From the NCBI GenBank assembly GCA_003693705.1, contig RBZT01000125.1, positions 248,001 to 312,000 on the forward strand: a stretch of 64,000 nucleotides of DNA, read 5' to 3'. Shown one piece after another: positions 14,657 to 62,691 of the stretch (position 1 is its first letter; every line of letters begins with the position of its first letter). The notes under the pieces were generated by a model that was not told where the DNA came from, searched no databases, and saw only the letters and a program-made list of their open reading frames with translations. The position numbers were made by a program, and so were the translations under genes. The DNA is from Polymyxa betae A26-41 (taxonomy: Eukaryota > Protista > Endomyxa: Phytomyxea).

Positions 14657-17216
14657 ATGACCCGAGGTTCGTTACATAGATGTCCCAGGGTTCTGTTACA
14701 GATCTGCATTGCTCCATCTAATAATGCAGATTCGTAATTGTCGTCTATTGAATGGATACATACTTCGATGTCAGAGCTATGGTGAGCTATACAAAATAAT
14801 CAATGATGATCTCGATCAGTTCAATGCTGTTAATTGCTCCACCGCACTGTACCGCTCAGCTTTGTTGGGAGCTACTGGGGATTGCTCGTCGATTTTATCG
14901 TCATTGATTGCGAGAACGCTGGCAGTTATTACTGACTCTTCCGAACAACTTAATTCTAAAACCTTGTCCAGCATTGCCTGGGCTGTCGCTAAATTATCGT
15001 CGTCTCATTCCATTTTGTTAAATCGCGATTCCTTGTCTACTTTGTATGGCGTTTGCATTCAATCTATCAAATGCTTTGATGCTCGAGGTATCGCTCAGCT
15101 CGTCTGGTCAATGGCAACAACCGGATTTCAAGACTCCAAATCTATCAAATCCCTGCTTCCTTCGGCGATGATATTTGCTCAACAGCGAGCATACAAAAGC
15201 CAAGAAATCTCGATGTAAATTGCTCACAGTTTCTATTGGACTTTGGTTTTCTTATTCCTGATAATTGCAGGCTTGCTTGGGGGTTCTGCACCCTGAATGC
15301 AGATATCAGTCGGTCATTTCTAACAGAAATCGCTAAGTCGTGCCTTGCATCTATCGATCACTTCACCGGTCAAGGCCTGGCTCATGTTGCTTGGACACTC
15401 GCACGATACAATCTTCATCATCCAAAGCTAATGTCCGCCATTGCTCATCGGCTTCACCGGATTGAATTTGATCTTCAAGCGCTTGCTTCCATTGCATGGT
15501 CGTTTAACAGATTGGAACTGGCTAATGATCAGATTTTAGCGACCTTGTCAGATCTCGTGCTGAAATCCAGTCTCTCTGGTATCTCCTCAAAGACAGCTGG
15601 GCAGTTGCTTGATGCATTCTCATCTTGGAATGTCACTAGCGATGTTATTAAGCAGATACTGGAGAGTTTGACATCGGAATCCATCGCTTCGATGAATTCA
15701 TCTGAAGCTGTACATATGCTGGGATGCATTTCAAAATTACCTGCTCCATTTGGATGTGCCTTAGATGATGTCGTGATGAAAGTTTCGGATTCTCTTCATG
15801 AATTGCAAGCAGAGGAGCTTGGGATTGCAGCGGCCGCGTTGAACCGCTTATTCAGACAGGGAAGAATCAAAGAGCTTAAGGATTGCATTCGTCAGCCTTT
15901 TGTGAAAGCTTCCAAGAAGGTGATCAATCAGCTTAATTGGAGATCAATTGGACATATTGAATTACTTCAACGAATTACGTGTGGCGAAGAATTCAGATGG
16001 CAGCGATCAGAGACTAAATTAGCCTCGAAACTTACAAATCGAATGCAGAATCTTTATGAGGAACTGGAATCGAATGCGAAAAATCGTAACGCGTCCCCTT
16101 TGGTCGCATTTACGGGTCTGAACTCTCCTATCTCAAAGCCTGCCTCTGTCCTGCTGATGGGCAATGACCCGGAAAATATTCTCGATGCCTTCTGCCGAGA
16201 TAATGATCTGCAATGTATTCATTGGTGCCGAAACATATCATCGACACAAAGATCCATCCATTGCTGGGATTCGATTGCAGAGAAATCCTTCGATGCTTGC
16301 ATCATCCGATTCGCTCCATCCATTGGTACGCTTTTTGTGTCGGTAGTTATCATGTTCTCCCATTGAGATTATTACAGTTGAATTTAAGATGATGATAGAT
16401 TTAGCTGCTTCAAAATTGTCCAGTGGTGATCCACTCTGGGTCTGTGGCCTACCAGAAGAGGGAATTTCTGGCATGCTGGCTGACAAAGCTTTCATTCCTA
16501 TGTTTACCAAGCCGGATTCAATTCTACAAACGAGCAACGCTGTGATTCTATCTGCAAAGCGATCCCAAATTCCACACACGAAATCCTTTGGACATTGGTT
16601 TCAGACTCGCAATGTTGAACGACACGAAATCAATGCTCCTGAATGGCATACCGCCCCTGGTCTCTTTGCTGGCGGCCTTGTGGATGTAATGACGGCGGAA
16701 TTACTAAGGGCAATCGAGCATATCAAACCGAAATGTCGTATTCTCGACTTTGGCTGTGGGTCTGGTGTCATTTCTGCATCGCTTTTAAGGCGGTTTCCTT
16801 CTACCAGGATTGTTATGACTGATTGTGACAGCATCGCGTTGACTGTCGCCAAACGTAATGTCCCTGATGCTGATCACGTGTTAGCGGATGGCTGGCATAA
16901 CTATCCCAAGCTGTTTCATATGATCGTCTCTAATCCGCCATATCACTCTGGACAAATGGACAGTTTCACTGTTGTACAGAATCTGATCGACGGTGCTGTA
17001 TCGAGGTTGAAGCCCGGCGGCTCGCTATATATTGTCAGCCAAGAGCAAGTTCCGATTGGCCGCCTGTTCGCTTGTTCTCCAGCCAAATACGAACTTATTT
17101 CATTATGTCCAACAGCTGATCCTCGATTCGTCGTTTGGAAAGCAGTCACTTACAACAAGCCAACTCGAATCGAATTGCCGTCTTCAGAGAAGCCAGTAAA
17201 GAGACGCAGGAGATGA
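14657..17216 (+). CDS. Helical-repeat (OPR/HPR/FASTK-like) protein fused to an RsmC-like class I SAM methyltransferase
   Basis: Repeats of the type 'F..Q.LA..AW...L' in 14709-16000. Introns at ~15215-15270 and ~16327-16377 join three ORFs in frame (ISM|LAW and APSI|VEFKMM). The C-terminal MTS domain has PGLFAGGLVD, LDFGCGSG and NPPYH. Confidence 0.8.
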
Positions 17217-17323
17217 GTGACATGTGAGCCTCTGTGTATCGTTAATCAGGATAACATAAACAATGATGTATGGTGGGGAATGTCATTGAATGGGCTCATT
17301 ATATCATAGACCTTCCTCTAGCT

Positions 17324-18199
17324 ATGGATAAACTGTCATCCGGCGCCCAGGTAGACCAGCGACCGGCGCCCCAATTGCTGCAACATACCCTAGATAGTAA
17401 AGTATGGAATCGTACAACCATTGACAGACCTCTCAAATCCAGCGGCAGCTATGGATAGATCAGGTCGACAACGAAGACGATTTTTATGATAATCTGGGCC
17501 ATTCGTTCGACTACCAGCCTGATCCAATTGCTGAGAGGAAGATTGAGGCAGCACTTTTTTGTGATGAGAAAATGCCCGGTCAATTGATTGCAGATCCTGC
17601 GAGGAACAACGCCCATCTGACAAGAAATCAGGTCAAGCTCTTATATGGTCATGTCTCTTTCGCTCAGTTTTTCTTTTTCAGATACAGACCGGATTAACAC
17701 CAGTTGAGGAAGGCTGTGTCCAAGTTGCTGAAAATTCAGGACATAAACTTCTGCGTTCACAAAAAACGATTTCCTCCGCAGAGCAGGGCCATGTAAGCGC
17801 TGAATATCCCGCTCCTGATGAGAAGGAAGATTCTGTTGCTAATACTCTTTATGAAAGCGAACTTGCGTATCAAAAATGGAACCAGAAGGTGTCACAGTGT
17901 GACGAAAACTTTGGAAGATTGCAGCAAGAAATTCAAGCTGGACTTGAAAGTAACATGAGTTTTAGTTTGAATTATCGTCATTCATTGTTGTGATAGATTT
18001 TCAAAAATCTATCGAATCGTTAGCAGAAACATTTTCAAAAATGGTGCCACAAATGGTCGAGCAACTTCGCATAAAGGCGCAATCGGCCATCGAAGAAGGC
18101 GAGGCTAAAATTCAGGTTGGGCAGAACTTAAAGGCAATGTTGGTGCATGCACATAAGATTGCAAGATCGTTCGAAGAAAGCATGAACATTGAACGTTAA
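17324..18199 (+). CDS. Hypothetical protein with a C-terminal coiled coil, about 4 exons
   Basis: Open frames are linked by plausible GT-AG introns and end in ORF 17990-18199. No family recognised. Confidence 0.5.
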
Positions 18200-18357: not shown

Positions 18358-19092
18358 ATGCAATCCGGAAGGGCACTGGTTCCGACATGCAAACTGGTGC
18401 CGAGCATCCGAATTAAAGTCTTGACAATGGGAGACGCCGGTGTCGGTAAAAGTTGCTTAATCAAGCGGTACTGTGAAAGGAAGGTCATTGCAGACAAACT
18501 TTCTGGTTGAGCCTGTTTAATGAAACCCCAGCTGCGTAGTTCGTTGATCGGTATATTAGCACGATCGGTGTCGATTACGGCGTGAAATCAGTCAAGCTGA
18601 GGTCTCGAAACATCAGCGTCAATTTCTGGGACCTTGCAGGCCAGGCTGAATATCTTGAGATTCGAAACGAATTCTACAAAGATACGCAAGCAGTATAAAT
18701 TGGTTGAAATCCTGTTCCAATCATTCAGCTGGTTAGCATAGGCAATATTGATATTCGATGTTTGCTCGAGACCATCTTTCGAGAAACTGAACACATGGCT
18801 TAAAGAATCAGCACAATTCGGAGCCAAGCCAAAGGTGATTGTGGTTTGTGGCAATAAGACCGACCTACCAGGACGTGCTGTTTCGAGACTGGAGGCCTCG
18901 GCATGGGCTGCATCGAAGGGATTCAAGTACGAATGCTGTGGTTCATTGCTCCAGTTTCTGATGTTGGTGTAAATCTGCAGGTACTACGAAACATCAGCTC
19001 AGAACGGCGAAAATGTTGACAATGTATTCGAGCACGTTTTCGAAGTAGCTTCTGCAGATCAGCCAGGGTCCCAAGCCATATCTCGAGCCTAA
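18358..19092 (+). CDS. RJL-family Rab-like small GTPase (DNAJC27-like, lacking the J domain)
   Basis: Spliced translation gives GDAGVGKSCLIKRYCE, STIGVDYG, FWDLAG, RNEFYKDTQ, GNKTD, YYETSA. The KRYCE and RNEFYKD motifs are typical of RJL/DNAJC27, and there is no C-terminal prenylation motif. Confidence 0.85.
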
Positions 19093-37171: not shown

Positions 37172-38259
37172 TTACGATGAGGATTGCTGGGGATTTGTTG
37201 ACCCATTGGGAATCCACTTCGAAAGAACACTTGTGTTAAATGAACTACATGACGAGCATTTGTGGTAGTAGAAATGGAAGTCAGTCTCTGTTCTGGCCAG
37301 ACAATCATTGCAGAGAAGCTGGGCCCGCATACCCTTGTATTCCGGCGGAATCTCGATGGAATTCACGTAGCTATCAAACATTTCGAAGTGATCCCTTGTG
37401 TCGATAATAGATTTAAGACAAACAGGACATGTGTAGTCGGTAGCAGTATATCTCTTGAAGCAATCCGAATGCATAGCATGACCACACGTCATGAAAATCA
37501 CGGGCTCGACTGAAGTAAACATGAACTCGTGACAGATTGGGCAATTCGATTCCAGTGATCTTTCAATGCATTTGTGGGTATCGAATACGCGCATACTGAT
37601 ACAAGCATTGCAAGCTTGACAGTGTCGAAAGTCCTGCTCAAGCCCTTTCCCTCGTCTACAAAGACCACAATGCTCGCAATGATAGATATCTTTGCTGTCA
37701 TCGTCATCAAAGAATTTGCAATGGTGACAATAGTACTGGGCCAGATTCTGTTCATAGCGATCACAGCTGGAGTTTGAGCAGACAGCCCCGATAGGCATTA
37801 GCGTATTGCAATGCATGCATATCATAGACTGAATGGCATGTCTGTCGATGTTGTGGTCGGATTCCTCGTCATGACAAAGCCTGCAGGTGAAAACCTGCTG
37901 ACAGCACGGCGAAACAATTCTAACCTGTCGAGCATAATGTTTACAGCCTAAGACATCGTCCTTCTGTGAAAAAAACATCAGTAAATAGACTAGCTCCAGT
38001 GAGGGATGACATACATGATAGGATTTCTCTCTAAGGATGTCGACAGAAGAAATACAGCAATCGGCGCCTGTTGATTCATGGGACGGCCCCGTTCTACGAC
38101 CAGTTGCCGATCCCTGAGTGAGCAGCTCCTGCACCAAAATGTTCTTATCTTTGCTGCTCAGCTTCGAGTCGGTCAGGATAGCTCGAATCCTAGCCCGTAA
38201 AGCAGCCTGCTGGTCGATGTCGCTTATGGGCATCGCCGAGCTAGGATCAACGTTATGCA
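37172..38259 (-). CDS. RCHY1: RCHY1/Pirh2-like CHY zinc finger + RING-H2 + zinc ribbon E3 ligase
   Basis: GCKHYAR..PCC..CRLCHDE, YYCHHCKFFDD, CPICHEFMFTS..CGHAMH..C, CPVCLKS, LCNDC, FH...KC..C.SFNT. Confidence 0.93.
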
Positions 38260-50817: not shown

Positions 50818-51500
50818 TCAATACCACAACATCCCCGGACGACAAACCAACTCCTCGCCCTTCTCCAAGCAGTTCGATATTCGGCCTGCAATAAATTTCG
50901 TGTTGTGATCTCGAGGATCACCTGACATGTTGATAATCGCAATGACAAAAGGAAACTGTCTCAGAGCTCGGAACCTCTGTCGTGCCTTGAGTTGTAACTT
51001 ATGAGTTAAAACCGCTCTCAACAAGCAGCAGACAAGTCGGTGACATTCTGCATCCGCCTCCCGGATGGCCTACTAGCTTGATCGGCATCATCGTCGAAGG
51101 CTTGAAACAGGAGAGGCTAGAATAAAGCCTGGTTTTATAAAGTTCAATGCGATCAGATACAGAAACCAGCTCGCATCTGTCTCCATCGCGTGGATGCCTT
51201 TGTCTGTCAATGCCGCTGAAACAAGACTCATCATTCTATAAGCTCGCGTCGGTTTATGCATGAACTGGATTGCGGGTCTGGACCCAGAACATATTCGGCG
51301 GATCCCAAAGGGCGAGAACTTGCAACACGAGGCACGATACTGCCATCTTAGCAGCGCTTTTATAAAGCGCAGCTTAGGCCCAGGTCGCTATATGGCATCT
51401 CGTATCAACTTTATGCCAACGGCGAAATGGCCCGGACAAGCCTTTTCAAAGCGGAACAAAACTTACTGTATTTCGACAGTGAACTCCTCAATAACCTATT
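50818..51500 (-). CDS. Possible small multi-exon hypothetical gene
   Basis: Open frame 50818-~51070 with upstream candidate exons. No motif recognised. Confidence 0.25.
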
Positions 51501-51621
51501 CAATGATCGGGTAATTGTAGGGTGGAATGAAGGGCGAACTCTACAAATGAAAACGCTCATCAACTTTCTTAGCGAAACAATCTATTAAATATATCGTTTG
51601 GTACTAACATCACAATGATCC

Positions 51622-54600
51622 TTAAAGAAGACATTGATCTTCACGAATGGTCGATAAAGGCTCTGCAGACAGCTATTTACTAACTACGGCTCAGCTAGAG
51701 AAAGCAACACACCTTTCTTTTGATAATGCAGTATGAATGGGTGAACTAACACCTGGTTCATTGCGGGTCGCTTGGAGGGATCTTTACAAAGTAACTGCAA
51801 ATCACACTTTAGAACGACGAATAATATAACAACATTACCACGAACGCTCTCAATCAAAGATTGTGCCAAAGGATCGCTATGACTACTGAAAACCGGGGCC
51901 TCGTTCGCAACCTAAAGAAAGAACTAAAAAAACGCCTAATACAAAGCGAGATAAGTTCTCTTACAAGGTTCAAGTCTACGACATTATCGCTGACAGAGAA
52001 TGGAACTCTGCCAACTAGAAGAGTAAAAGCGAGAACACCCAAACTCCAGGCGTCAACAGCCCAAGTAAGGTTGTTGATCAGCGACCCGTCATTCAGACAT
52101 TCAGGCGGCCGAACAGGCAGATTAGTGATGCCAATTGTAGGACCAGCTAGTTTTGGAATACCATCTGGACGGAAATCACTCAGACACAATATAAGCGACA
52201 CTGAAGTGATTACTGGCAGTCAACAGAACTTTGTGAACTGCAACCTGGCAATGAACCATCCCCTTACTGTGGATGTAATCCAAAGCGTTTGCCAAGCATG
52301 ACATTAGGAAAGCCACATCCTATATCAAAACAGCTTAGCCAGGCGGAAAAAAACGGCCCAGCACTTTAAGCGGTACCGATGGAGGGAAAACATATTTTTT
52401 CGACAATAAGTCTTGCAGATGATTTGAAAGTGGTTTCGAGTTCGCAATGTACTCTTGTACGATGTAGATCCATCGATCATCTTCAAAAGAACCCAACATA
52501 CGGCGAAGATATGGGTGCCTATATAAAGCTCAATTCTGATGGATTAGACAGAACCTTTCTATTACATCAACTGCCCCAGCATCTCAATTCTCTGAATGAG
52601 AACATCAGACATCTTTGATTTTTCTATCTTTTTGCGAGAAATCTTATTAATGACATAACGAGTCGACGTCTGGTGTTCAACTAATGCCGATTTTAGACCG
52701 CATGAGCAAACAACAAGGAAGATGCCCCACTAGCTAAATAATGGATTCCGAAAGTGCCTTGCCCAAGCTCTGATCGAATCTGAAAGTCAGATGCTTTCCA
52801 GTATCTATGACCTTGACTATCGCGTCGAGACCTGCTGCGGCTACCTCGGGATGACACTGTTTTAACTGAATCTGAGCTCTGCCCCGGCATGTCAGCTTCA
52901 CCAGGAGCGTTTTCTTTAGCATCTTGCTTGTTGCGCTGCGAAGGTTCAAATTACAGAGCTAAACAACTTCAACAGGACTCACTTTAGATGCAGAACCGTT
53001 GGAACCTGTTCCTGGCCTGGATCCAGTAAGAGGATCACGTTCACCCAGAACCGCCTTCGATTTAGGCTTATGGAAGCGATCCTGCTATATGTCAGGGTGA
53101 TGCAAAGGAATTATAGGTCATTCTTACTAATTGATCGAGTTTGCTTTGTAACGATTCAACTAGTGAGCATTGCGAATCGAGTTTCATCTGCCATGCGCCG
53201 TCGACTTCTGCAATTCGAAGTTCATGGAGCTCTTGCAGCTCTTTCAATGCAGCTCGTTGTTGTTCCTGAGCGAGGTCTTTTTCATGCTGTATGGCATTCC
53301 GAACAACAGATTCGTTCTAAACATATTAGAATAACTGTAGGACTCCTTCCTAGACTTACTTCAACTTGCATCACAGATCTAGTAGCATCAACAGCAGCTT
53401 GCAACTGTTCCTGGAATATCGCTTCGGAAGATTCGACGATAGCTTGCCATTCTCTAGCCGTCTCGGTCTTTGCCTTTTCAACCATAACCAGTTGTTGGGC
53501 TCTACTCGCTTCCACAAACTGAGCGATCTGAAGTTCCTGCTCTAATTTCAACGCCTGAAGAACTTGCTCATGATCATCAGCCAACTGCTTTTTCTGGGAT
53601 TCGAACTGTTGAGTGATCTCGCAAATACCATCCTCAAGATTTCGGTGAAGAGCCTCGATCTCTTTCTGCTTTTCCGCAATTACCCCATGAAGACGCTCGA
53701 GCTCTGCAGTATTAGCAAGCAGAGTACTGGAGAGCTCATCCCTATTTGCAGTAATGATTTCCCTCTCTTTCTCGAAAGATTCTTTGATGGAAGCTATCTT
53801 GTCTGCAGATGCAATCTGGAGCGTGCTCAACGTCGCAGCAAATTCAGTCTGCTGATGCTCTATAGCTAATTGCAGCTCTTTCAATGCAGCTTGTTGTTGT
53901 TCCTGAGCGAGGTCTTTTTCATGCTGAATGGCATTCCGAACAACAGATTCGTTCTAAAAATATTTAGAATAACTGTAGGACTCCTTCCTAGACTTACTTC
54001 AACTTGATTCACAGATCTAGCAGCATCAACAGCAGCTTGCAACTTTTCTTGAAATATCGCTTCGGAAGATTCGATAATAGATTGCCATTCTCTAGCCGTC
54101 TCGGTTTTTGTTTTTTCAACCATAACCAGTTGCTGGGCTTCACTCGCTTCGACAAACTGAGCGATCTGAAGTTCCTGCTCTAATTTCATCGCCTGAAGAA
54201 CTTGTTCATGATCATCAGCCAACTGCTTTTTCTGGGATTCGAACTGCTGAGTGATTTCGCAAATACCATTCTCAAGATTTTGGTGAAGAGCCTCGATCTC
54301 TTTCTGCTTTTCCGCAATTACCCCATGAAGACGTTCGAGCTCTGCTGTATTAGCAAGCAGAGTACTGGAGAGCTCATCCCTATTTGCAGTAATGATTGCC
54401 CTTTCTTTCTCGAAAGATTCTTCGATTGAAGTTATCTTGTCTGCAGATGCAATCTGGAAAGCGTTCAACGTCGCGGCAAATTCAGCCTGCTGTTGCTCTA
54501 CAGCTAATTGCAGCTGTTCAATTTGCTCCCGCGGACTTTCCTCATTACTGATTTTCATCGCGATCTGCTGACTCCTGAATTGCTCCTCTGAGTGCTGATC

Positions 54601-56901
54601 AAGGCAAGTTTCTGTACATGAAATTAACATCACTGAATGAAATATACGAGATTTTCGTACCAAGATAGGCCACCTTTAAGCTATATGTGGAGTCAATAAG
54701 ATTCAGAGTTTCAACACGGTTCTAAAAATTGAGCATTTCAGTTCTAGAAGTTGTTAACGGAAACAGGTGCTTACCTTCAATTCGATTTCATATTCTCTGA
54801 TGAAGTATTCGAACTCTTGAATCACTAACTCTTGATCTTTGAGTTTCTCGTTAAGATTTCTGAGATCCTGACGTCTCACATTAGATACCTTCTGTGCAAT
54901 TTGTATAACTGAAGTACTTGGTCCCGGCTTTCCAAAGAATGCAGTAGTTCCGATTTCTCTTGATCTGAGAATACAAGCTGAGTCTTATAATTGTGAACTC
55001 GGTCCAGAAGCACCCCGGCACCATCCGCTTTGAACTTGGAGATCTTAACCTGAATACTTCTCAGATGCTAAAGACTGCAAAAACGAAAATATCACTTGGG
55101 CATTTAAGTCATTGATAACAGTTCGACAAAGCTGTAGCTCTTCCTGAAGCTTGCTAATTGTAAGTTCGGAAAATTCTAATCGCTTTGATGAACAGGCCAT
55201 CTGGGCATCGAGTTCAGCTTTAAGGCGTTCCTCGAATGATTTAGCCTGGAACCATATCAAAGAAAGGCAAGTTCGTAGCACAATCTTGTACCTGTTGTTC
55301 GAGAGCTTTGTTTGCAGAAGTTAGCTTCGACTGAAACTCCAAGCGAGCGGCGTCGAGTTCAGCTTCTTTGACTGCCAAAGTCTTCTTGTACTCTTGATGG
55401 ATGGCTGCAATTTCTGACTCCTTTGACTTATTCACAGCAGCCAGCGATTCTTGTAAAGTCTCGGCAAACGCTCTTTCCCGTTGCTCGGTGTCTTCATCCT
55501 ATAGACAAGTTAGCAACTAGCAAGACATCATGCTCACGAAACAACCATGCTCTTTTGAGAAGCTATCACTTCATTCAGTTCTGCAATCTGCGTTTCGTAG
55601 TTTTGGATCAACAAGCTGATTGTGGATTCAAACTCGGATGTCTTAAGTTGAATAGCTTCTTCAACTCGGGGAAACTCAGCTTGAACTTTGGCAGATTCAT
55701 TACTGGATTGTGTAGCATCTGCAATAACTTTCTTCTGATCATCATTCTCAGCCTTAAGAGTTTCAATTTCCAATTTGCTTTCTTTGAGTTGGTTTTGGAG
55801 TTCTGAAAATTGATGCATGTGGTCTGATCTGAGCTCTTCTAGAATCTTCATCTCATCCTCTTTTGCACTTATAATACTTTCAAATGCTGCCTTCTGAGTC
55901 ATCAGATCAAGGTCGAGGTTTTCTCGAGCAGTTTTTAATGCTGTCTCAATCGCCTCTGTAGCATCTGCAATAGCTTTTTTCTGATCACCATTCTCAGCCT
56001 TAAGAGTTTTAATTTCCAAATTGCTTTCTTTGAGTTGATTTTGGAGTTCTAAATATTGATGCATGTGGTCTGATCTGAGCTCCTCTAGAATCTTCATCTC
56101 ATCCTCTTTTGCACGAATGATACTTTCAAATGCTGCCTTCTGAGTCATCAGATCAAGGTCAAGGTTTTCTCGAGCAGTTTTTAGTGCGGTCTCAAGCGCC
56201 TCTGTAGCATCTGCAATAGCCTTTTTCTGATCACCACTCTCAGCCTTAAGAGTTTCAATTTCCAAATTGCTTTCTTTGAGTTGATTTTGGAGTTCTAAGA
56301 ATTGATGCATGTGGTCTGATCTGAACTCTTCTAGAATCTTCATTTCATCCTCTTTTGCACGAATGATACTTTCAAATTCTGCCTTCTGAGTCATCAGATT
56401 AAGATCCAGGTTTTCTCGAGCAGTATTTAGTGCGGTCTCAAGCGCCTCACATTTACTGCTGATTGCTTTAAGCTCTTTGTCATGAGAAACTGTCAGCGCC
56501 CATCGGCTACGAATCTCATTTTCAAGAAGCTTCTCGAGTTCACAGACGGCCGTTTCAGAGGACGCACTGAGATCGATTTCCTCGGCCAAAGCACTGACAC
56601 AATTCTCGACTTCTGAATGCAAGACCTGAGCGCCGTGTACTCCGGAGAACAGTGTTTGAACATTATCACGAACGTTATCAAGCGCATGAACGCCTTCGTT
56701 CAGGTTGCGCTGCAACTCGGAATAATCAAGCTCGGCAGTTGCAACATCGTTTTCGTTAAATTCGTAAACGACCTTCTCTCCAACATAGGTTTTGCTGGAC
56801 ACTTTTTTCTTCAACGCCAAAACGATCGTGGCAACCGCGATCATTACAGTCGCGATGACAGGAACTGCCCATTGCAGGACTGAGCCGTCCAGCGAGACCA
56901 T
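51622..56901 (-). CDS. Membrane-anchored long coiled-coil protein with a C-terminal Aurora-like pseudokinase domain, multi-exon
   Basis: N-terminal TM WAVPVIATVMIAVATIVLAL-KKK. Successive exons splice in frame through the rod to KENAPG and then WKASDFQIRSELGQGTFG, HPYL, YIVQEY, LDYIH, PPE, VDAWSLGV, GRVPF and LL.KDPSKRP..QVLVHPFI. Confidence 0.75.
53235..54515 (-). repeat. Two-copy ~638-bp intragenic tandem duplication including an intron
   Basis: Near-identical blocks offset by 637-638 nt; compare ORFs 53282-53884 and 53881-54663. Confidence 0.93.
55711..56448 (-). repeat. Three-copy 246-bp (82-aa) coding tandem repeat
   Basis: The unit EALETAL.TARENLDL.LMTQKA.FESII.AKEDEMKILEE.RSDHMHQ...KKAIADAT occurs three times. 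Confidence 0.95.
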
Positions 56902-59064
56902 TGGTAATCAGATCCGGCAAGACCCTCCGTCGAGGGGAATCTCTTTGATATTTAACTACCACAAGGGAGACAGACCAAAAGGCTGGTTCGTGGAAGCAGA
57001 AGTTTCGGGAGTGAGAGATAGAGAGCGCGCAAATTGAATGGGGAGCCCCCTGCACCATTCTGTAACAGATCTTATCACATATTTATACCCATAGCTAGAG
57101 ACATGTAGTATCTCAATCTTGTCCAGGACCGGGAGTCGAGCGTGCCAATGTTTCCCCAAAAACAATATTCTCGAGTCGATGGAGACATTCCGTGTTCCAT
57201 TGGTCAATGTTGGGGATCCCGCTTTCTCTATGACGAGATATTTGGGTGATTCTAGGCCTCTTTTAACGCGGAAAATATACAAGAGAAAATCGATGGTCAT
57301 AAAGATAGTTGCCCAGTATTCGTAGATAAAAAAATGATATTGAACATATCTCGGTTATAAGGTATGGGAGGTACCAAAATGTCCAAATTCTTAGACCTTG
57401 CGCTTTGAACGATGCTGTGTGATCTTTACATCAACAGAAATGAGTCAAATTCAATTTGATCCAAAAACTGAGACCGCAAAGGGGTATCTAGTGTTTATAA
57501 CGTAAAGTGATTCTGTGTGATAATAGGCTGTCTAATAAGCCCCGAACCCTGGACTAGTACCCACATTTTGAAGTAAGACCCTCGATTCTAGAAATGTATG
57601 CCCGAGGATTCGCGATTGAAAGACTTATATAAACCTTGGTATATCCAGTCGTTTACAGTAAGTACCAAGGAGTTGATAATGTTCTGCTTAGCAAATGGCT
57701 CGATATATTTTCAAGAGGCAGCCTATCAACTTCAGCTATACCTCATTTCGTGGTTCATTTGTCTTAGGGTTCAGGGTTCCTTCCAGCTAGAAAGCAGTTA
57801 TGCTCGTTATGATTCTCAATGCTGAGTAACCAAGAATGTTGATTAAAAACCCTGGACCCTGATTATAATTAGCATACTCTTATTACCAGAATTATTGTAC
57901 TTAGCTGGATTGGAGATTATCCACTCTACACAACTTCAGTTTTGCCTCTTTGCAACCAAGGGCCCGAAATTTTCACCTCTTTTTTAGCTGTCGGGCGTGA
58001 GAATGAAAGCCCATGTTATGACACTTGCAGCGCCTTGTTTCCTCAATTACGTCCAGGATTACTGAAAAATCCCAGAAGATATTTCGCAAAGGAAATATCT
58101 CTTGAAGGCAACTTTTCCGGATGCATTCACGTCTGGACCCTTCCAGGAGCGAATGAAGAAGTGGTTTACAGGACGACAAACCCATCTCGAACCATTCAAG
58201 CAAAACTGCTTATCTCCAGTCGTTTCAAGTGGTAATGATTATACTTGATGCCTCGAACACTTTTTTCATTGTCTAATCCACTGCAGACCCATCAGTTATT
58301 AATTTGCAATTATACCGGAAACTTCGGGAAGGTGAATTCTCTGACGATACCGCTTTCCAGGTATGTTGATGCTTCTGATGAGGAATCTTTCCTTAGAAAG
58401 ATATCTGCTTCCAGGTCAGAGAGCCTCGCGAAATCCCAGGATTAGCACAGAATTCAAGCAACCCACGTCTATTGTCTTCCACTGTCCCATCAAGTAGCAG
58501 ATGGGCGTCACAACGTTGTCAAATCATCGAGCAATGGATTGCAGAAAGGCTATCGAGCTCGAAAACCAGTCGCGTCCAGTTGGCCGTCCAGTTTTTTCTG
58601 AATGATAATGATTCAGGTTCATTAATTTAATTGAAAAACGTCGGGTCTGAAACTTTCCAGGTGCTAAAGACAGCAAAGAGACTTCAGCTACTTCGCCCTC
58701 GAAGCCAGCTATTACGCTGTAATTGTTTTGCCATTTCCCATTATATCTTCTGATGCCAGTTTGAAGCGGGAGTCTAGCAGTATCACGCCGCCATCTTCTT
58801 TCAGCTGGATTGACTCAAAGCCACATTGACCGAATTTATCGGGCGTCGGTTATCGTTGCATTGCCAGCGTGTAGTCAGTCTGACATCTCTTCAGCCTGTA
58901 CACGTACTCGGTCGGTATCAACGAGTTATTCGCCGACATTGCTGAGAAGGGTCGCCTTGGCAAGCACCATGATTTGGCCACAAATCTCTGGAGAGTCTAT
59001 ATATCACTAATCGAGACTGTGAACTCAACTGGACATCTGACCGCCTTCAGCAGACGTAACACGA

Positions 59065-61688
59065 TTGTTGAGGGGAGGCCACGCCCATAACTCACTTTGT
59101 CGTGATTTAGTCGAATCTCGATATCGAGATGATCTGCTGGCGGTGGTTTCGAAGTCGAGCTCCCAGTTTCGTCATGCTGTCAGTGCCCTCGAACAAGCGC
59201 AGAAGGATGTGATCGGGCTGAGGGAACAATATGACCAGGAGCATAACATGGTTTTAGAGCTGATTCAGCGAATCGACCAGCTCCAGCTGGATTCGTTGGC
59301 CGGCAGGAATCGGGCTGAGAACGATAGGCTCAGATTTGAAACTGCTGCTAGCCAGCTGGAAGGAACTCGTGCCCGCCTTGCTGCCGTTCAATGCAGAACA
59401 TTTCTTGATCGCTCGCAAATACGACGCTTAACAGCACAGCTTCGGTACGTTCAAAACTGTTGGCGAGTCTTTTTATATAACGTCTTTCTTTCAGAATGTC
59501 AACCACAGAAATCGCTGATTTAATGCGGCAATTGTTGGCGGTTATAGCAGAACGTAATGAATTCAAACGACGATTTGGTTTTGCTGAAGAACAACTGCGA
59601 GTTCTGACAGAGAGACATAACATGCAAGGTCAACAGTACAATGATATTCTCATTCGATACGGACATGTATCCGATGAGTTCCATGCACTGAGTAAGTCGC
59701 ACGACATATCTGAAGCAGAATTAGATCGCGAGAGGACATCAAACCGAGATTTTCGCCAGCGTCTCAATCAAGTACAGGTCGCGCTTGAAGAATCAGCGCG
59801 ACGGTTTGACGATGTGAATAATCGCCTCATGAATGTTTCGTCACAGCTCACAGAACGTTTACGGCAGCATGACCACGACATGACTTTAATCGCATCTTTG
59901 AAAGCCGATATTGGCAGCATCTCGCTTCAGAATTTGGTCGTTACCGCGCAAACAACCGACCTGACTTCCGAATTGGAACGTTGGCAACGACAGGCTGGCG
60001 AACAACAACTAGCTTTAACAGAAGCAAGTGGCAACAGTGTTCAACTTGTCGAACAGCTTCGCGGTTGTCAAGCTTCGAATGCGGATTTAGAACAGAATCT
60101 ATCGGAAGTAAAAGAGACTTTGGCCACAGTGCAACAAGAATTAGAGACATCGCAGAATGAAGGTCGCCGACAGCGCACCCGAGTTCTGGAACTCAAGACG
60201 TCGTTAGCGCGCGCTTCCGAACAAGTCAATGAAGCTGTGGCCACTCTACATACTACCCGACGTATTAAAGACGCCAAAATTGCCGATCTCGAACAGGAAT
60301 TGGCTATCATGCAGAAAGCTGACGATGAACATCGTCTGGAAGCCATATCATCAGAAAAAACCGTTTCTCAGTTGAGATCTGAACTACGATCGCTTAAAGC
60401 ATCGCTTGACGCAGCTCAGGCGGAATTGCTCTTACATTCAGCATCATTGATTGAAACGAAAAAAGACAGAGGGTTTCTCGAACACCTAGTGGAATCTCAG
60501 AAAAATAGCATCGCTAGTCTTGAAAGGCGATTACAAGCGGCTAATAGCGAAATGAAGACGCGGGATCTGGTTCAGCTTCAAACTCAGCAATACATCGCTG
60601 ATTTGAAAAACGAGATCGAGAAACTGAACAGCTCTATCATTGCGGAACGAGGTTTCCAGCATGATATTTCACAGAAGCGCCCTTTACGTTTAAAAAGACG
60701 GCACTCCACCGGAAACATTCACACTTCTGTAAAATCGATGCATCGTACAAATTCTCTGCAGAAAATCTCAATTACTGTGAAAGGCAAAGATGAAGCAAAC
60801 AAAGGTGTTGCTTGGCAAAGCGATTCATTGATGAACATCATGGTAAGAGCTTGTCAAGAGATGCAAAACCGCTTGGAGAAACAGCAAGATAGAATCAGGC
60901 ACCTGGAGGCATCCATCGCTGAACACGACCAAAACGTTGAAGCTCCAGAGCCCAGGAGTACCAGTACCTCCTCGACCAATTTTAGCATTCTGTCCAGCAT
61001 TGAGAACATTGAAAGATCTCAAAAGAACAGAGCAAGAGCTACGTCGTTAAGTTTTTCTCAATCTACTGAAGCCGTCGTTCATGCGGAAGAATCTCCCCCC
61101 TCTTCTGTTGACGACGAAATGGAAGAACTTGACAAACTGCTGCTGAGCAGAAACGAATCCATGATGCTTAGAGACGATGAGACCCGATTTCGAAGTGGTG
61201 CAGATTCAAAAGTACTGAATTCGGTTGATCCCTCCCAGAATCGTATCGCCATATCTCGTGAACGTGCCACGATGACTGGCCTCGAAACTTTGTCAGGATG
61301 GTCTCCAACATCTGCTTCAAGTTTCGACTCTTTTGATCAGTATTCTGTACCAAAACGGAAACCTCGACAGTCATCATCAGAACTGAAAGTGGTGATGCCA
61401 ACTGAAGCTATGTCAATGCATAATGGCAATCAGGCGCTTTCAGCATTAGAGGACGCTCTGCGGGCGGTTACAACGGAACGCGCGCGTCGTGACACTAGTG
61501 GACCAATTGGAGTAAATCATAGCCGAAGAAGACAAACTGAATGGTCAGTTCGTCCAGATCAGATTCCTTCAAACGCAACAGCATCAACATGGAGCATTAT
61601 GAGAGAATCAGAACGACTGGCTGAGAGAGACCGTCGACGTCAATCGCTCGAGAAATTGACATTGTATAGACAAAACAGCCTGAAATAA
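59065..61688 (+). CDS. Large coiled-coil protein with a Ser-rich disordered C-terminus; start uncertain
   Basis: A 730-aa heptad-rich ORF joined to upstream ORF 59065-59523 by an intron near 59444-59494. Confidence 0.75.
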
Positions 61689-61832
61689 TATAGAAACGAC
61701 TTCAAATGAACATGATATTAAGCAAGTTCGATCAAAAATTGTGCAGATTCAAGATTATTTGAAGCATTCGACCGTACTATTTGTTGGAACTCCATTTTGA
61801 AGGTTTGTGTTGGTCAATGTGCCAAGCATTTT

Positions 61833-62691
61833 ATGTCCAATATTAAGATCCAACGCTGCGAACCATCAGCAGCCAAAACCAATATTGTATTTGGCGATGC
61901 TCCTCGCATTTACTCGACGAACTCTCGTTCAAGCTTTACACCGTTATCAAGGCGATGTCCTTCACGAATCTCACCTATTCTTCAATCATCGAAATCTCAA
62001 ATACGTTTAGGCGATGCTGCGGCGGAATTTTGCACAGATTCGATCGCATCTTCACATCACCGATCCTTATCAGGCTCAGCATCGACTTCAACTCTTTGGT
62101 CGCCCGATAAATCTGCTGCTGCTGCTGCAAAACTCTCGAAAGAAAAACTTTTGGAATCACATTTGCCTTGGAAAGAACCGCCTTTGTACACTACTACAAG
62201 TCGAGCAATGCCGCCAAACTTCATTCATCGCCCAATTCAAGAAGTCCATATTCGCCAAGAGACTGTGAAGTCTGGGATTAAATTTGGGGACTACGCGCCT
62301 ACATATACTACTTCATCTAATACTGCTACTAGCTTTACTGAGGGTACCATTTGGCTTAAATTTAAAAAAGTAAATTGGATGCTAAATAGTCTCAGCAAAA
62401 GCGGAATTCGGGGCCCATAACTTTTTTCGCCGAGGTTCGCGTCGCCATCGAGGTGCTGAGGCAACAACTTCTATGACTTCTAATGAAATAGCCGAGACCT
62501 CGAAGTCATTGTCGAAGATTGCAGCAAATAATAACAGGACCGGATTCGTCTTAGGATACGATTCAACCGAGTATCAATGCACGAATAGTATGTCCCGGTA
62601 TTTCGATAGATCAAAATGGGATTCGAGCGTTTCTCACAAATCTCAATCTCGGCCCCGAGACGCAAACAAAACTAATATCTGGTTTGGATAA
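61833..62691 (+). CDS. Hypothetical protein with repeated [ST]xxx[FL]G(D)...Y.T motifs (possible axonemal microtubule-inner protein)
   Basis: TNIVFGD, SQIRLGD, SGIKFGD, TGFVLGYD and TNIWFG recur across two exons. Confidence 0.5.

What the first reader, a model, noticed from the sequence alone, without database searches (positions are those of the whole stretch)
51622..56901. One gene joins a membrane anchor, a very long coiled-coil rod, a KEN box and a dead Aurora-like kinase
Seen: the ORF track shows about ten fragments, but hand-splicing at GT-AG sites keeps one frame (KSM|DEDT, EQQ|AKSF, ELK|NRVE, LDQL|QDRF, SASK|RNKQDAKENAPG) from an N-terminal TM helix to a kinase fold. The kinase begins WKASDFQIRSELGQGTFG, and its catalytic motifs are replaced: VAIK by YVINK, HRDIKPEN by HCQVAVHK, and DFG by AGP. 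Known: Aurora kinases start W...DF.IG..LG.G.FG, often follow a KEN box, and are small soluble proteins. Inference: this is a membrane-tethered spacer that presents an inactive Aurora-like domain far from the membrane, as a scaffold or decoy for Aurora partners (INCENP/TPX2-type) at the nuclear envelope, centrosome or Golgi. I know of no described protein with this architecture.
Basis: partly seen in the sequence, partly recalled or inferred. Interest (0 to 1): 0.8.

Follow-up and report, generated by a model that had tools for sequence, protein, structure and literature searches.

The report
Membrane-anchored rod ending in dead Aurora
This is one real, expressed gene of the plant-root parasite Polymyxa betae that joins a membrane anchor, a very long helical rod and a catalytically dead copy of the cell-division kinase Aurora (with Aurora's own KEN degradation motif); it is conserved in at least three plasmodiophorid genera but has never been described.

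Summary
Spliced RNA contigs give 15 GT..AG joints, and two more are inferred from loose ends. Together they define an 18-exon minus-strand gene, ATG 56901 to stop 51624-51622, 1,482 codons in one frame.

It encodes:
- an N-terminal signal anchor;
- a conserved orphan juxtamembrane block;
- a rod of about 1,000 helical residues, lengthened by two recent tandem duplications under purifying selection (omega 0.2-0.34);
- a Ser/Arg linker with the protein's only KEN;
- a kinase domain lacking all four catalytic residues.

Full-length orthologues exist in Spongospora subterranea (1,665 aa, hypothetical protein) and Plasmodiophora brassicae (1,446 aa, syntenic). Both have the same layout and the same dead motifs (H.Q..., [AC]GP). 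A fourth taxon is known only from fragments.

The Aurora origin is well supported:
- PDB and Foldseek top hits are all Aurora A.
- In the tree, pseudokinase plus Aurora form one clade (94/97).
- Two introns share position and phase with the genome's canonical Aurora gene.
- Exon 11 mirrors Aurora's N-terminus (SKENVAPG against AKENAPGE).

The likeliest history is an Aurora duplicate fused to a membrane-rod gene before plasmodiophorids diverged. The scaffold or decoy function remains an inference. I found no literature on it. I ran no search or fold on a joined spliced model: exons were searched separately and orthologue proteins served as proxies.

The parts
51622..56901 (-). Coding region of the whole gene: 18 exons, 1,482 codons. 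Exons: 56901-55546, 55498-55292, 55245-55096, 55049-54918, 54867-54775, 54721-54661, 54611-53998, 53953-53360, 53316-53128, 53081-52983, 52935-52731, 52680-52566, 52518-52377, 52319-52214, 52164-51965, 51911-51846, 51794-51713, 51662-51622.
   Evidence: RNA joints, splice-site and phase check. Colinear with the full-length orthologue P0003, aa 2-1636.
56902..57074 (-). 5' untranslated region, minimum extent.
   Evidence: The RNA contig 56348-57074 covers it. An in-frame stop lies 2 codons upstream of the ATG.
56803..56871 (-). N-terminal signal anchor (residues 11-30) plus a KKK cluster. The predicted topology puts the short N-terminus outside and the rod and kinase in the cytosol.
   Evidence: Kyte-Doolittle mean 2.63, and it is the only hydrophobic window in the protein. 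It is helical in the AlphaFold model. The same anchor followed by a basic cluster is present in P0003 and P0051. The topology is inferred from the positive-inside rule.
56422..56781 (-). Conserved juxtamembrane block (residues 41-160), an orphan module.
   Evidence: 59% identical to Spongospora and 46% to Plasmodiophora, as conserved as the kinase. No Pfam family and no paralogue in the genome.
55711..56448 (-). Rod repeat A: three tandem units of 246 bp (82 aa each) inside exon 1.
   Evidence: Tandem Repeats Finder: 94% matches. Omega 0.21-0.27 between units; Fisher p 0.0007.
54999..55034 (-). Conserved mid-rod motif FKADGAGVLLDR (exon 4).
   Evidence: Identical core in Spongospora (aa ~985) and Plasmodiophora (aa 850). 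Exon 4 is 52% identical to P0003.
53249..54522 (-). Rod repeat B: tandem duplication of about 637 bp that carries its own intron (exons 7/8 and the start of exon 9).
   Evidence: Alignment of the two copies. Omega 0.34, Fisher p 0.003. Both introns have intact splice sites.
52801..53081 (-). Ser/Arg/Gly/Pro-rich linker (exon 10 and the first 45 residues of exon 11). Exon 11 corresponds to the N-terminal tail of Aurora.
   Evidence: 17 Pro+Gly in the 101 residues of exons 10-11. No Pfam family. Compared with the true Aurora's N-terminus.
52909..52917 (-). KEN box (DAKENAPG), the only KEN in the protein.
   Evidence: Conserved as SKEN at the equivalent linker position in P0003 (aa 1335) and P0051 (aa 1114, its only KEN). 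The genome's canonical Aurora has TSKENVAPG at residues 8-10.
52816..52827 (-). Conserved basophilic phosphosite-like motif RRDS, 5 residues before the kinase start.
   Evidence: SRRDSQG / KRRDSTG / SRRQSDG in the three species. That it is phosphorylated is inferred.
51714..52800 (-). Aurora-derived pseudokinase domain (exons 11-17, seven exons).
   Evidence: Colinear Pkinase hits per exon. Orthologue domain: Pfam E 1e-32, PDB top 60 all Aurora A, AlphaFold pLDDT 90, Foldseek top 50 all Aurora A, tree 94/97 with Aurora.
52643..52654 (-). VINK: Asn at the beta3 catalytic-Lys position. The orthologues have AIKK and AVKK.
   Evidence: Exon translation. Alignment positions read from A2 and the orthologue sequences.
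52221..52253 (-). Catalytic loop HCQVAVHKVLL in place of HRDIKPENLLL. The catalytic Asp is Gln and the Mg-binding Asn is Lys.
   Evidence: The same D-to-Q and N-to-K changes occur in HGQVCLDKVLL (Spongospora), HRQVSLSKIIL (Plasmodiophora) and HCQVSAHKVLL (metagenome fragment P0001).
52100..52144 (-). GPT at the DFG position, an activation segment shortened by about 10 residues with no T-loop Thr, and the retained Aurora-type PPE.
   Evidence: LAGPT / LCGPC / LAGPS in the three species, with PPPE invariant.
52519..52565 (-). Intron 12 (phase 2). Its position and phase are identical to an intron of the genome's canonical Aurora gene.
   Evidence: Window ...CAG TTG AT|gt..ag|G CAC CCA. Aurora ...CAT CTG AG|gt..ag|G CAT GAA.
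51795..51845 (-). Intron 16 (phase 0). Its position and phase are shared with both Aurora-like genes of the genome and with the P. brassicae orthologue.
   Evidence: SLIES|LLCKDP (window), DLISK|LLVKNP (Aurora, L029), DFISK|LLQKD (L022), DLIQK|LLHKD (L027).
51663..51712 (-). Last intron, seen in one run only. If retained, the protein ends ...KKGVLLSLAEP instead of ...PLSTIREDQCLL.
   Evidence: The joint 51662/51713 appears in X2 only. Translations.

Best explanation
This is a single expressed gene of Polymyxa betae. It encodes a single-pass membrane protein of 1,482 residues.

Layout of the protein:
- A short N-terminus is followed by a signal anchor and a basic cluster. This predicts that everything downstream faces the cytosol.
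- A conserved orphan juxtamembrane block of about 120 residues comes next.
- A helical rod of about 1,000 residues follows, up to about 150 nm long if it is extended.
- A flexible Ser/Arg linker follows the rod.
- The protein ends in a complete but catalytically dead Aurora kinase domain.

Origin. The linker and kinase are an Aurora paralogue captured from its first coding exon onward. That exon brought Aurora's N-terminal KEN box with it. It was fused to the 3' end of a membrane-rod gene before Polymyxa, Spongospora and Plasmodiophora diverged.

Loss of catalysis. The catalytic Asp became Gln, the Mg-binding Asn became Lys, DFG became [AC]GP, and the activation loop shortened. In P. betae the beta3 Lys was also lost. 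The fold, the Gly loop, the alphaC Glu, PPE and the structural residues were kept under selection.

Most likely mode of action (inferred, not shown). The protein is a non-catalytic tether. It holds an Aurora-shaped binding module at a set distance from a membrane, where it binds, sequesters or positions Aurora partners or substrates. Its abundance or engagement would be set through the cell cycle by the KEN box (APC/C recognition) and the adjacent RRxS site.
For: One gene:
- There are 15 RNA joints plus 2 junctions from loose ends, all in one frame.
- The RNA contigs break only at the two internal repeats.
- One contig links the last rod exon through the linker to the kinase.
- The Spongospora orthologue P0003 comes from a set of de novo transcript models. 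It spans anchor to kinase.
- The P. brassicae annotated protein P0051 has the same layout.
- All three are colinear and syntenic.

Selection:
- Rod repeats have omega 0.21-0.34, with p 0.003 and 0.0007.
- The juxtamembrane block and the kinase exons are 46-64% identical between genera, against about 25-30% for the rest of the rod.
- The same pseudo-active-site substitutions occur in four taxa.

Aurora origin:
- The PDB top 60 are all Aurora A, E 1e-28.
- The named word-search hits are all aurora kinases.
- Per-domain phmmer gives 56-90 bits for Aurora against 54 or less for PKG, MST, NEK, CaMK, MSK and the others.
- In the ML tree of 38 rows with none dropped, pseudokinase plus Aurora form one clade at 94 UFBoot / 97 SH-aLRT.
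- Two introns are identical in position and phase to introns of the canonical Aurora gene of the same genome.
- The N-terminus of exon 11 parallels Aurora's N-terminus, including KEN and APG.

Fold intact: AlphaFold pLDDT 89.8 and pTM 0.88; Foldseek TM 0.8-0.87 to Aurora A.

Anchor.

A possible partner exists: an INCENP IN-box gene is in the genome.
Against: - No long read spans the whole mRNA. RNA contig depth rises 5' to 3' (21/44/104 and 12.6/20/95). This could be 3' bias or an additional internal start that yields a shorter soluble product.
- The Aurora grouping is just under the tool's star threshold. The panel has no labelled Polo-like kinase.
- With a single family member in the tree, the placement was unresolved.
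- The AlphaFold alignment contained Auroras, so the Foldseek result is not independent.
- Localisation, topology, nucleotide binding, partner binding and KEN function are all untested.
- The kinase domain of the window's own gene was never analysed as one sequence. The joined spliced model was left out by rule.
Confidence: 0.6

Rival explanations
1. There are two products. Besides, or instead of, the full-length mRNA, an internal promoter in or after the rod gives a shorter soluble protein made of the rod end, the linker and the pseudokinase. In that case the membrane anchor and the kinase would often be uncoupled.
For: RNA contig depth is 2.4 to 4.7 times higher over the kinase end than over exons 2-7. 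It is lower again over the 5' end, and the ratio differs between the two runs.
Against: The kinase contig continues upstream through two spliced introns into rod exon 9. It stops only at the repeat boundary, and its loose end reads the end of exon 7/8. The frame stays open throughout. The Spongospora transcript model and the P. brassicae gene model are full length. A 3' bias in poly(A) libraries explains the gradient.
Confidence: 0.15
2. The domain is still an enzyme: an atypical kinase or nucleotide-dependent switch that uses migrated residues. One candidate is the conserved Lys that replaces the catalytic-loop Asn. This would resemble WNK, CASK or other 'pseudo' kinases later found to be active.
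For: The Gly loop (GxGxxG) and the alphaC Glu are kept in all species. The beta3 Lys is kept in two of three genera. A Lys is invariant at the Asn position.
Against: The catalytic base Asp and the DFG Asp are missing in all four taxa. The activation loop is truncated and has no T-loop Thr. P. betae also lacks the beta3 Lys.
Confidence: 0.1
3. The kinase domain is not Aurora-derived. It is a fast-evolving member of another group (AGC, CAMK or PLK), drawn to Aurora by chance similarity or long-branch effects.
For: Single-exon PDB searches give mixed best families: Tribbles/MSK/PLK, PKA/ROCK and CK2. The first tree, with one family member, did not place it with Aurora. No labelled PLK is in the panel.
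Against: Whole-domain searches give only Aurora at the top. The tree with two members gives 94/97, and the tree with long rows removed gives 89/96. Two introns are shared with the true Aurora gene. The N-terminal KEN-APG tail is shared. Aurora's PPE is retained.
Confidence: 0.06
4. It is a decaying or neutrally drifting fusion with no function, transcribed only incidentally.
For: All catalytic residues are lost. The rod is variable and prone to repeats.
Against: The frame stays open across 18 exons. Orthologues are retained in three genera plus a fourth taxon, with conserved blocks and conserved replacement residues. Omega is well below 1 in the repeats. The gene is expressed and syntenic.
Confidence: 0.03

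Closest known systems
Aurora kinases (Aurora A/B; Ipl1 family)
   Same: The kinase domain groups with Aurora (94/97) and has the best sequence and fold matches to Aurora A. It shares two intron positions with the genome's own Aurora gene. It also keeps the Aurora-type N-terminal SKEN tail, the GxGxFG..(Y/F)(L/H)A Gly loop, the ANAL.Y.HSK helix and PPE.
   Different: All catalytic residues are replaced, and the activation loop is about 10 residues shorter with no T-loop Thr. The domain sits at the C-terminus of a membrane-anchored rod of about 1,200 residues, whereas Auroras are small soluble proteins. It is not a functional member of the family.
BUBR1 / Mad3 (KEN boxes plus a degenerate C-terminal kinase domain)
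   Same: The logic is the same. After duplication of a mitotic kinase, one copy keeps KEN motif(s) and an inactive kinase fold that serves structural or binding roles. The BUBR1 facts are from my own knowledge of the family.
   Different: The two are not homologous beyond the kinase fold. Pfam finds no Mad3/BUB1 domain on the orthologue, only Pkinase. The kinase is Aurora-derived, not Bub1-derived. BUBR1 has neither a membrane anchor nor a rod.
Kinectin / RRBP1 (p180)-type ER proteins and TM-anchored golgins
   Same: A single membrane anchor is followed by a very long cytosolic coiled coil that works as a tether or spacer. In kinectin and p180 the anchor is N-terminal, as it is here (own knowledge).
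   Different: There is no sequence similarity: no Pfam family for the anchor, the block or the rod. None of these proteins carries a kinase or pseudokinase head. Golgins are anchored at the C-terminus.
Scaffolding pseudokinases (Tribbles, SCYL1, ULK4, TEX14)
   Same: These are inactive kinase folds used as protein-binding modules. Tribbles was the best PDB hit for the C-lobe exon alone.
   Different: They come from different kinase lineages. None has this anchor, rod and KEN architecture.

Membership tests
Aurora kinase family | The kinase domain groups phylogenetically with bona fide Auroras. | tested here: met
   ML tree of 38 rows: pseudokinase plus 4 Auroras form one clade at 94/97, and at 89/96 with long rows removed. 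The test used the orthologues' domains. The limits are that no labelled PLK is in the panel and the support is just under the star threshold.
Aurora kinase family | Catalytic residues present: beta3 Lys, HRD Asp, catalytic-loop Asn, DFG Asp. | tested here: not met
   VINK, HCQVAVHK and GPT in the window. The D-to-Q, N-to-K and DFG-to-[AC]GP changes occur in all orthologues.
Aurora kinase family | Activation loop of the form DFGWS...RRxT.CGTLDYLPPE, with a phosphorylatable Thr. | tested here: not met
   Only PPE is kept. The loop is about 10 residues shorter and has no RRxT. The canonical form is present in the genome's true Aurora.
Aurora kinase family | Gene-structure signature shared with the Aurora gene of the same genome. 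| tested here: met
   Two introns at identical codon position and phase. My estimate of the chance of two or more coincidences is about 0.002.
Aurora kinase family | Binds INCENP IN-box, TPX2 or Bora-type activators. | not testable with these tools
   An IN-box gene exists in the genome. The TPX2 Pfam family was not detected (uninformative). No complex prediction was available.
Pseudokinase | Intact bilobal protein-kinase fold. | tested here: met
   Pfam Pkinase E 1e-32 on P0003. AlphaFold pLDDT 89.8 and pTM 0.88. Structural residues are invariant with Auroras, including the PPE Glu and the alphaI Arg. The window's own domain was tested only exon by exon.
Pseudokinase | Lacks at least one canonical catalytic residue, and the loss is evolutionarily conserved. 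| tested here: met
   four taxa.
Pseudokinase | No phosphotransfer activity. | not testable with these tools
   This needs a biochemical assay.
KEN-box APC/C degron | A KEN tripeptide in a disordered, accessible region, conserved among orthologues. | tested here: met
   There is a single KEN in the Pro/Gly/Ser-rich linker. SKEN lies at the equivalent position in both orthologues and at the N-terminus of the true Aurora.
KEN-box APC/C degron | Cdh1/Cdc20-dependent recognition or degradation. | not testable with these tools
   This needs experiment.
Signal-anchored single-pass membrane protein | One N-terminal hydrophobic helix of about 20 residues, flanked on the C-terminal side by basic residues, and conserved. 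| tested here: met
   Kyte-Doolittle mean 2.63 for residues 12-30, followed by KKK. The same feature is in P0003 and P0051. Which membrane it enters, and its real topology, were not tested.
Coiled-coil rod | Long uninterrupted helices with heptad periodicity. | tested here: inconclusive
   Helices of 78-105 residues in the AlphaFold model of exon 1, at pLDDT of about 75. Pro and Gly are nearly absent, and a crude heptad contrast is 0.26-0.62. There are faint Ninein_long_CC and other coiled-coil Pfam hits. No dedicated coiled-coil predictor was available.
BUBR1/Mad3 | Mad3/BUB1 homology region (TPR) and GLEBS upstream of the pseudokinase. | tested here: not met
   Only Pkinase families are found on the full-length orthologue at E of 0.01 or better.

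The most novel reading that the evidence does not exclude
The protein would be a lineage-specific part of the unusual closed ('cruciform') mitosis of plasmodiophorids. It would be a nuclear-envelope or other endomembrane tether. Its dead Aurora head would capture the chromosomal-passenger or spindle Aurora activators, or Aurora substrates, at a fixed distance of about 150 nm from the membrane. APC/C would clear it through the inherited Aurora KEN box at mitotic exit. It would then be the first pseudo-Aurora: a membrane-bound, cell-cycle-timed competitor or positioner of Aurora signalling.
Probability: 0.15. Interest if true: 0.85.

Novelty: new variant of a known kind. Interest (0 to 1): 0.62.

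Why it matters
Aurora kinases are universal regulators of cell division. As far as I know, and in the literature searched here, no catalytically dead Aurora paralogue has been described. Nor has one mounted on a membrane-anchored rod.

The case gives a clean example, traceable exon by exon, of how a pseudokinase arises. An Aurora duplicate was fused from its first coding exon onto a tether gene. Its catalytic residues were then lost, while the fold and the degron were kept.

It also gives plasmodiophorid biology a concrete, testable candidate for lineage-specific control of their peculiar mitosis. Plasmodiophorids include the clubroot and powdery-scab agents and the rhizomania vector.

For pseudokinase research it offers a natural 'Aurora-shaped' binding module. 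Its partners could show which Aurora interactions do not depend on catalysis.

Tried and rejected
- Brute-force enumeration of GT/AG pairs was uninformative. The RNA joints replaced it.
- Raw RNA runs X9 and X12 ('same species label') gave no reads on the stretch, so they are no test.
- Single-exon PDB searches gave conflicting best families, and exon 12 matched no kinase. Exons are too short to classify.
- Searching the own genome with the orthologue's domain is confounded by exon size. Intronless PKG and MST outrank the multi-exon true Aurora.
- Whole-sequence phmmer scores were inflated by multi-kinase-domain proteins. Per-domain scores corrected this.
- The first tree, with one family member, was unresolved and showed long-branch joins.
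- The ESM Atlas look-alike search returned only generic kinases.
- The word search with the juxtamembrane block found only the query itself and missed even the known P. brassicae orthologue. It therefore says nothing about relatives.
- The genome's PLK (Polo box on C162) is multi-exon and could not be used as a tree row.
- The metagenome contig of P0040 had no retrievable DNA. No kinase-domain dN/dS could be computed, because the other orthologues are too diverged for dS.
- The '(mitochondrion)' tag on P0051 was rejected as localisation evidence, because the protein lies on a 1.03-Mb contig.

Full report

- Exons were searched one at a time, by reference.
- Whole-domain work used the database proteins of orthologues (P0003, P0051) as proxies.
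- Exon-wise results were only summed.

**1. The gene model**

The finding lies on the minus strand. The ORF list shows many stop-free pieces.

RNA evidence comes from four small 2022 runs of one study that hold about two thirds of the stretch's words.
- Two of these runs, laid on window 51300-57250, turned out to be spliced, RNA-derived contigs.
- They give 15 joints, all CT..AC on the plus strand (GT..AG on the minus strand), skipping 46-57 nt.
- Every joint resolves to a canonical donor and acceptor.
- Two further junctions inside the duplicated part of the rod follow from contig loose ends. The 9 extra letters read the end of the upstream exon (CAAGTTGAA|GTAAGT). This places exon ends at 53998 and 53360 and exon starts at 53953 and 53316.

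The result is 18 exons, with ATG at 56901 and stop at 51624-51622.
- There are 1,482 codons with consistent phases throughout.
- An in-frame stop lies two codons upstream of the ATG.
- Four of the five quoted junctions are exact. The fifth is 3 nt off at a NAGNAG acceptor.

Continuity of the transcript:
- The contigs break only at the two internal repeats, where short-read assembly must collapse.
- One contig links rod exon 9 through the linker to the kinase exons.
- Depth rises from 5' to 3' (21/44/104 in one run and 12.6/20/95 in the other).
- I read this as 3' bias, but it leaves room for an additional internal start.

**2. The organism**

- The window's genome has 27,085,814 bases in 1,001 contigs.
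- The Polymyxa betae draft is described as 1,001 contigs, 27,085,946 bp and GC 45.1% (PMC6328671).
- I take the genome to be P. betae, a plasmodiophorid (Rhizaria).
- The short introns fit plasmodiophorids, which average about 60 bp in P. brassicae (PMC4471660).

**3. Anatomy of the protein**

- Residues 11-30 (WAVPVIATVMIAVATIVLAL) form the only strongly hydrophobic segment. The Kyte-Doolittle mean is 2.63 and KKK follows.
  - By the positive-inside rule, this is a signal anchor with the rest of the protein in the cytosol. That topology is an inference.
- Residues 41-160 form a block that is 59% identical to Spongospora and 46% to Plasmodiophora.
  - It has no Pfam family and no paralogue in the genome.
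- Exons 1-9 then give about 1,000 residues with almost no Pro or Gly.
  - AlphaFold on exon 1 predicts helices of 78-105 residues.
  - No dedicated coiled-coil predictor was available, so 'coiled coil' is likely but not proven.
  - Fully extended, the rod would be about 150 nm long.
- The rod holds two recent tandem duplications.
  - One is 3 x 246 bp inside exon 1.
  - The other is 2 x about 637 bp and carries its own intron.
  - The copies differ mostly at synonymous sites: omega 0.21-0.34, Fisher p 0.0007 and 0.003.
  - The rod is therefore under purifying selection.
- A mid-rod motif, FKADGAGVLLDR, is identical in all three genera.
- Exons 10-11 form a Ser/Arg/Gly/Pro-rich linker.
  - It holds the protein's only KEN, against 0.53 expected by chance.
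  - It also holds a conserved RRxS five residues before the kinase start.

**4. The kinase**

Exon by exon, Pfam gives only weak but colinear Pkinase matches.

Reading the exons against the orthologues and against Aurora shows what is kept and what is lost.
- Kept:
  - the Gly loop, intact as GQGTFG;
  - the alphaC Glu.
- Lost:
  - the beta3 Lys position, which is Asn in P. betae (VINK); the orthologues keep Lys;
  - HRDIKPEN, which is now HCQVAVHK, with Asp changed to Gln and Asn to Lys;
  - DFG, which is now GPT.
- The activation segment is about 10 residues shorter and has no T-loop Thr.
- The Aurora-type PPE, the following DxWSLG...G.PF and the C-terminal HPF are retained.

**5. Relatives**

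- The gene is single-copy in its genome.
- The one exhaustive HMMER job used exon 15 (66 aa). It found three proteins that cover the whole exon at 52-65% identity.
- P0003 is Spongospora subterranea CRZ09267.1, 1,665 aa, labelled 'hypothetical protein'.
  - It comes from a species whose public protein models derive from de novo assembled transcripts.
- P0002 and P0041 lie on a genomic contig with GC 59%. The annotated Plasmodiophora brassicae protein P0051, 1,446 aa, matches it.
- P0001 and P0040 are fragments from a metagenome. They carry the same HCQ motif as the window and represent a fourth taxon.
- P0003 aligns colinearly from residue 2 to residue 1636 with the window, and from 8 to 1612 with the P. 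brassicae contig.
- All three species share these features:
  - the anchor followed by a basic cluster;
  - the juxtamembrane block;
  - the FKADGAG motif;
  - [SA]KEN in the linker; in P. brassicae this is the only KEN in the protein;
  - RRxS;
  - the same dead motifs (H.QV...K[VI][IL]L and L[AC]GP).
- The genes divergently upstream are the same in P. betae and P. brassicae, so orthology is secure.
- A word search restricted to long proteins found nothing comparable outside plasmodiophorids. The next best hits are fungal kinases at 24-25% identity.
  - The sensitivity of that search is limited.

**6. Is it Aurora?**

Single exons are too short to classify.
- Exon 11 hits only Aurora A.
- Exon 15 hits Tribbles, MSK, PLK and Aurora.
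- Exon 13 hits PKA and ROCK, and exon 14 hits CK2.
- Exon 12 hits nothing.

Whole-domain results with the Spongospora orthologue:
- The best 60 PDB sequences are all Aurora A, at E 1e-28.
- The named word-search hits are all aurora kinases.
- Per-domain phmmer gives 56-90 bits for four Auroras. It gives 54 or less for PKG and MST of the same genome and for 36 other kinases, including NEK, CaMKI and MSK.

Trees:
- A first tree with one family member was unresolved and had long-branch joins.
- I then dropped eight long rows: L033, L016, L014, P0013, P0012, P0037, L031 and P0016. I also added the P. brassicae fragments. The family then became sister to Aurora at 89/96.
- With both full-length orthologues and no row dropped, pseudokinase plus Aurora form one clade at 94 UFBoot / 97 SH-aLRT.
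- No labelled PLK could be included, because the genome's PLK is multi-exon.

Independent of any alignment score, gene structure points the same way.
- The genome's canonical Aurora (contig C841; HRD, DFGWS, RRTTLCGTLDYLPPE) shares two introns with the window's gene, at the same codon and phase:
  - ...HL-x|H[PE][YN]... at phase 2;
  - ...LI[SE][KS]|LL.K[ND]P at phase 0.
- The second intron is also present in a second Aurora-like gene on the same contig and in the P. brassicae orthologue.
- With about 6 and about 8 introns over about 800 possible sites, I estimate the chance of two coincidences at about 0.002.
- The true Aurora begins MSAFTTSKENVAPG...QRWTLKDFDIG. Exon 11 begins RNKQDAKENAPGE...HRYWKASDFQIR.
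- Exon 11 therefore looks like Aurora's first coding exon turned into an internal exon. The KEN box is Aurora's own. From memory, human Aurora A also starts with ...SKEN.

Fold:
- AlphaFold folds the Spongospora domain confidently (pLDDT 89.8).
- Foldseek returns only Aurora A in its top 50.
- The small input alignment contained Auroras, so this result is not independent.

**7. Explanation**

Shown:
- It is one expressed gene, conserved across plasmodiophorid genera.
- It has an anchor, an orphan block, a selected rod, a KEN and RRxS linker, and an intact kinase fold without catalytic residues.
- It descends from Aurora.

Inferred:
- An Aurora duplicate fused to the 3' end of a membrane-rod gene in the plasmodiophorid ancestor.
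- The bulk of the protein faces the cytosol.
- It acts as a non-catalytic tether, presenting an Aurora-shaped binding surface far from a membrane.
- It is timed by APC/C through the KEN box and by a basophilic kinase through RRxS.

An INCENP IN-box gene is present in the genome. The TPX2 Pfam family was not detected, which is uninformative. Which membrane the protein sits in is unknown. The '(mitochondrion)' tag on P0051 sits on a 1.03-Mb contig and is an annotation artefact.

**8. Rivals**

- A second, shorter transcript: about 0.15.
- Residual atypical activity: about 0.10.
- A non-Aurora origin: about 0.06.
- A decaying gene: about 0.03.

**9. Novelty**

- The library holds no paper with any 'Aurora pseudokinase' phrasing.
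- It holds nothing that links Aurora, pseudokinase and Plasmodiophora.
- The orthologues are unannotated.
- I rate this a new variant of a known kind: a pseudokinase derived from a well-known family, in a new architecture.
- It is interesting for pseudokinase evolution and for plasmodiophorid mitosis. It is lineage-restricted and functionally untested.

Noticed in passing
G000:C839:~172,900-174,400 (+), locus L022:1300-2930; outside the window, about 75 kb before its start: This is a second Aurora-like kinase on the same contig. HRD and DFG are intact, it has no PPE, and a roughly 200-aa acidic repeat-rich insert sits in the C-lobe. It shares the ...ISK|LL.KD phase-0 intron with the true Aurora and with the pseudokinase.
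   Followed up: partly
window 58893-62688 (+), 37178-37963, 18375-19071 against L027:135-4476, 14965-15837, 17320-18140: There is microsynteny between P. betae and the P. brassicae contig. The divergently transcribed upstream neighbours of the gene are conserved. A zf-CHY/RING gene and a Ras gene of the P. brassicae contig lie elsewhere in the same 64-kb window.
   Followed up: partly
P0051 (P. brassicae orthologue): Its NCBI name carries '(mitochondrion)' although the gene lies on a 1.03-Mb contig. This is an annotation artefact that could mislead about localisation.
   Followed up: no
window 51663-51712: The last intron is spliced in run X2 only. Retention would change the last ~12 residues of the protein.
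   Followed up: no
window 51300-57250: RNA contig depth climbs 5' to 3' along the gene (21/44/104 and 12.6/20/95). This may be 3' bias or an internal transcription start, and it is unresolved.
   Followed up: no
window 53081-53084: The acceptor of intron 9 is a NAGNAG site (TAG CAG|GAT). The RNA contigs use the downstream AG. Use of the upstream AG would add one Gln.
   Followed up: no
G000:C1001:33808-33963 (+), locus L040: An INCENP IN-box (Aurora-binding) match at 50 bits lies here. It marks the chromosomal-passenger scaffold gene of this genome.
   Followed up: no
P0004, P0008, P0011, P0019 and others: Many of the kinases most similar to the C-lobe exon are proteins with three to six tandem kinase domains, from stramenopiles and metagenomes. 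They inflate whole-sequence scores.
   Followed up: partly
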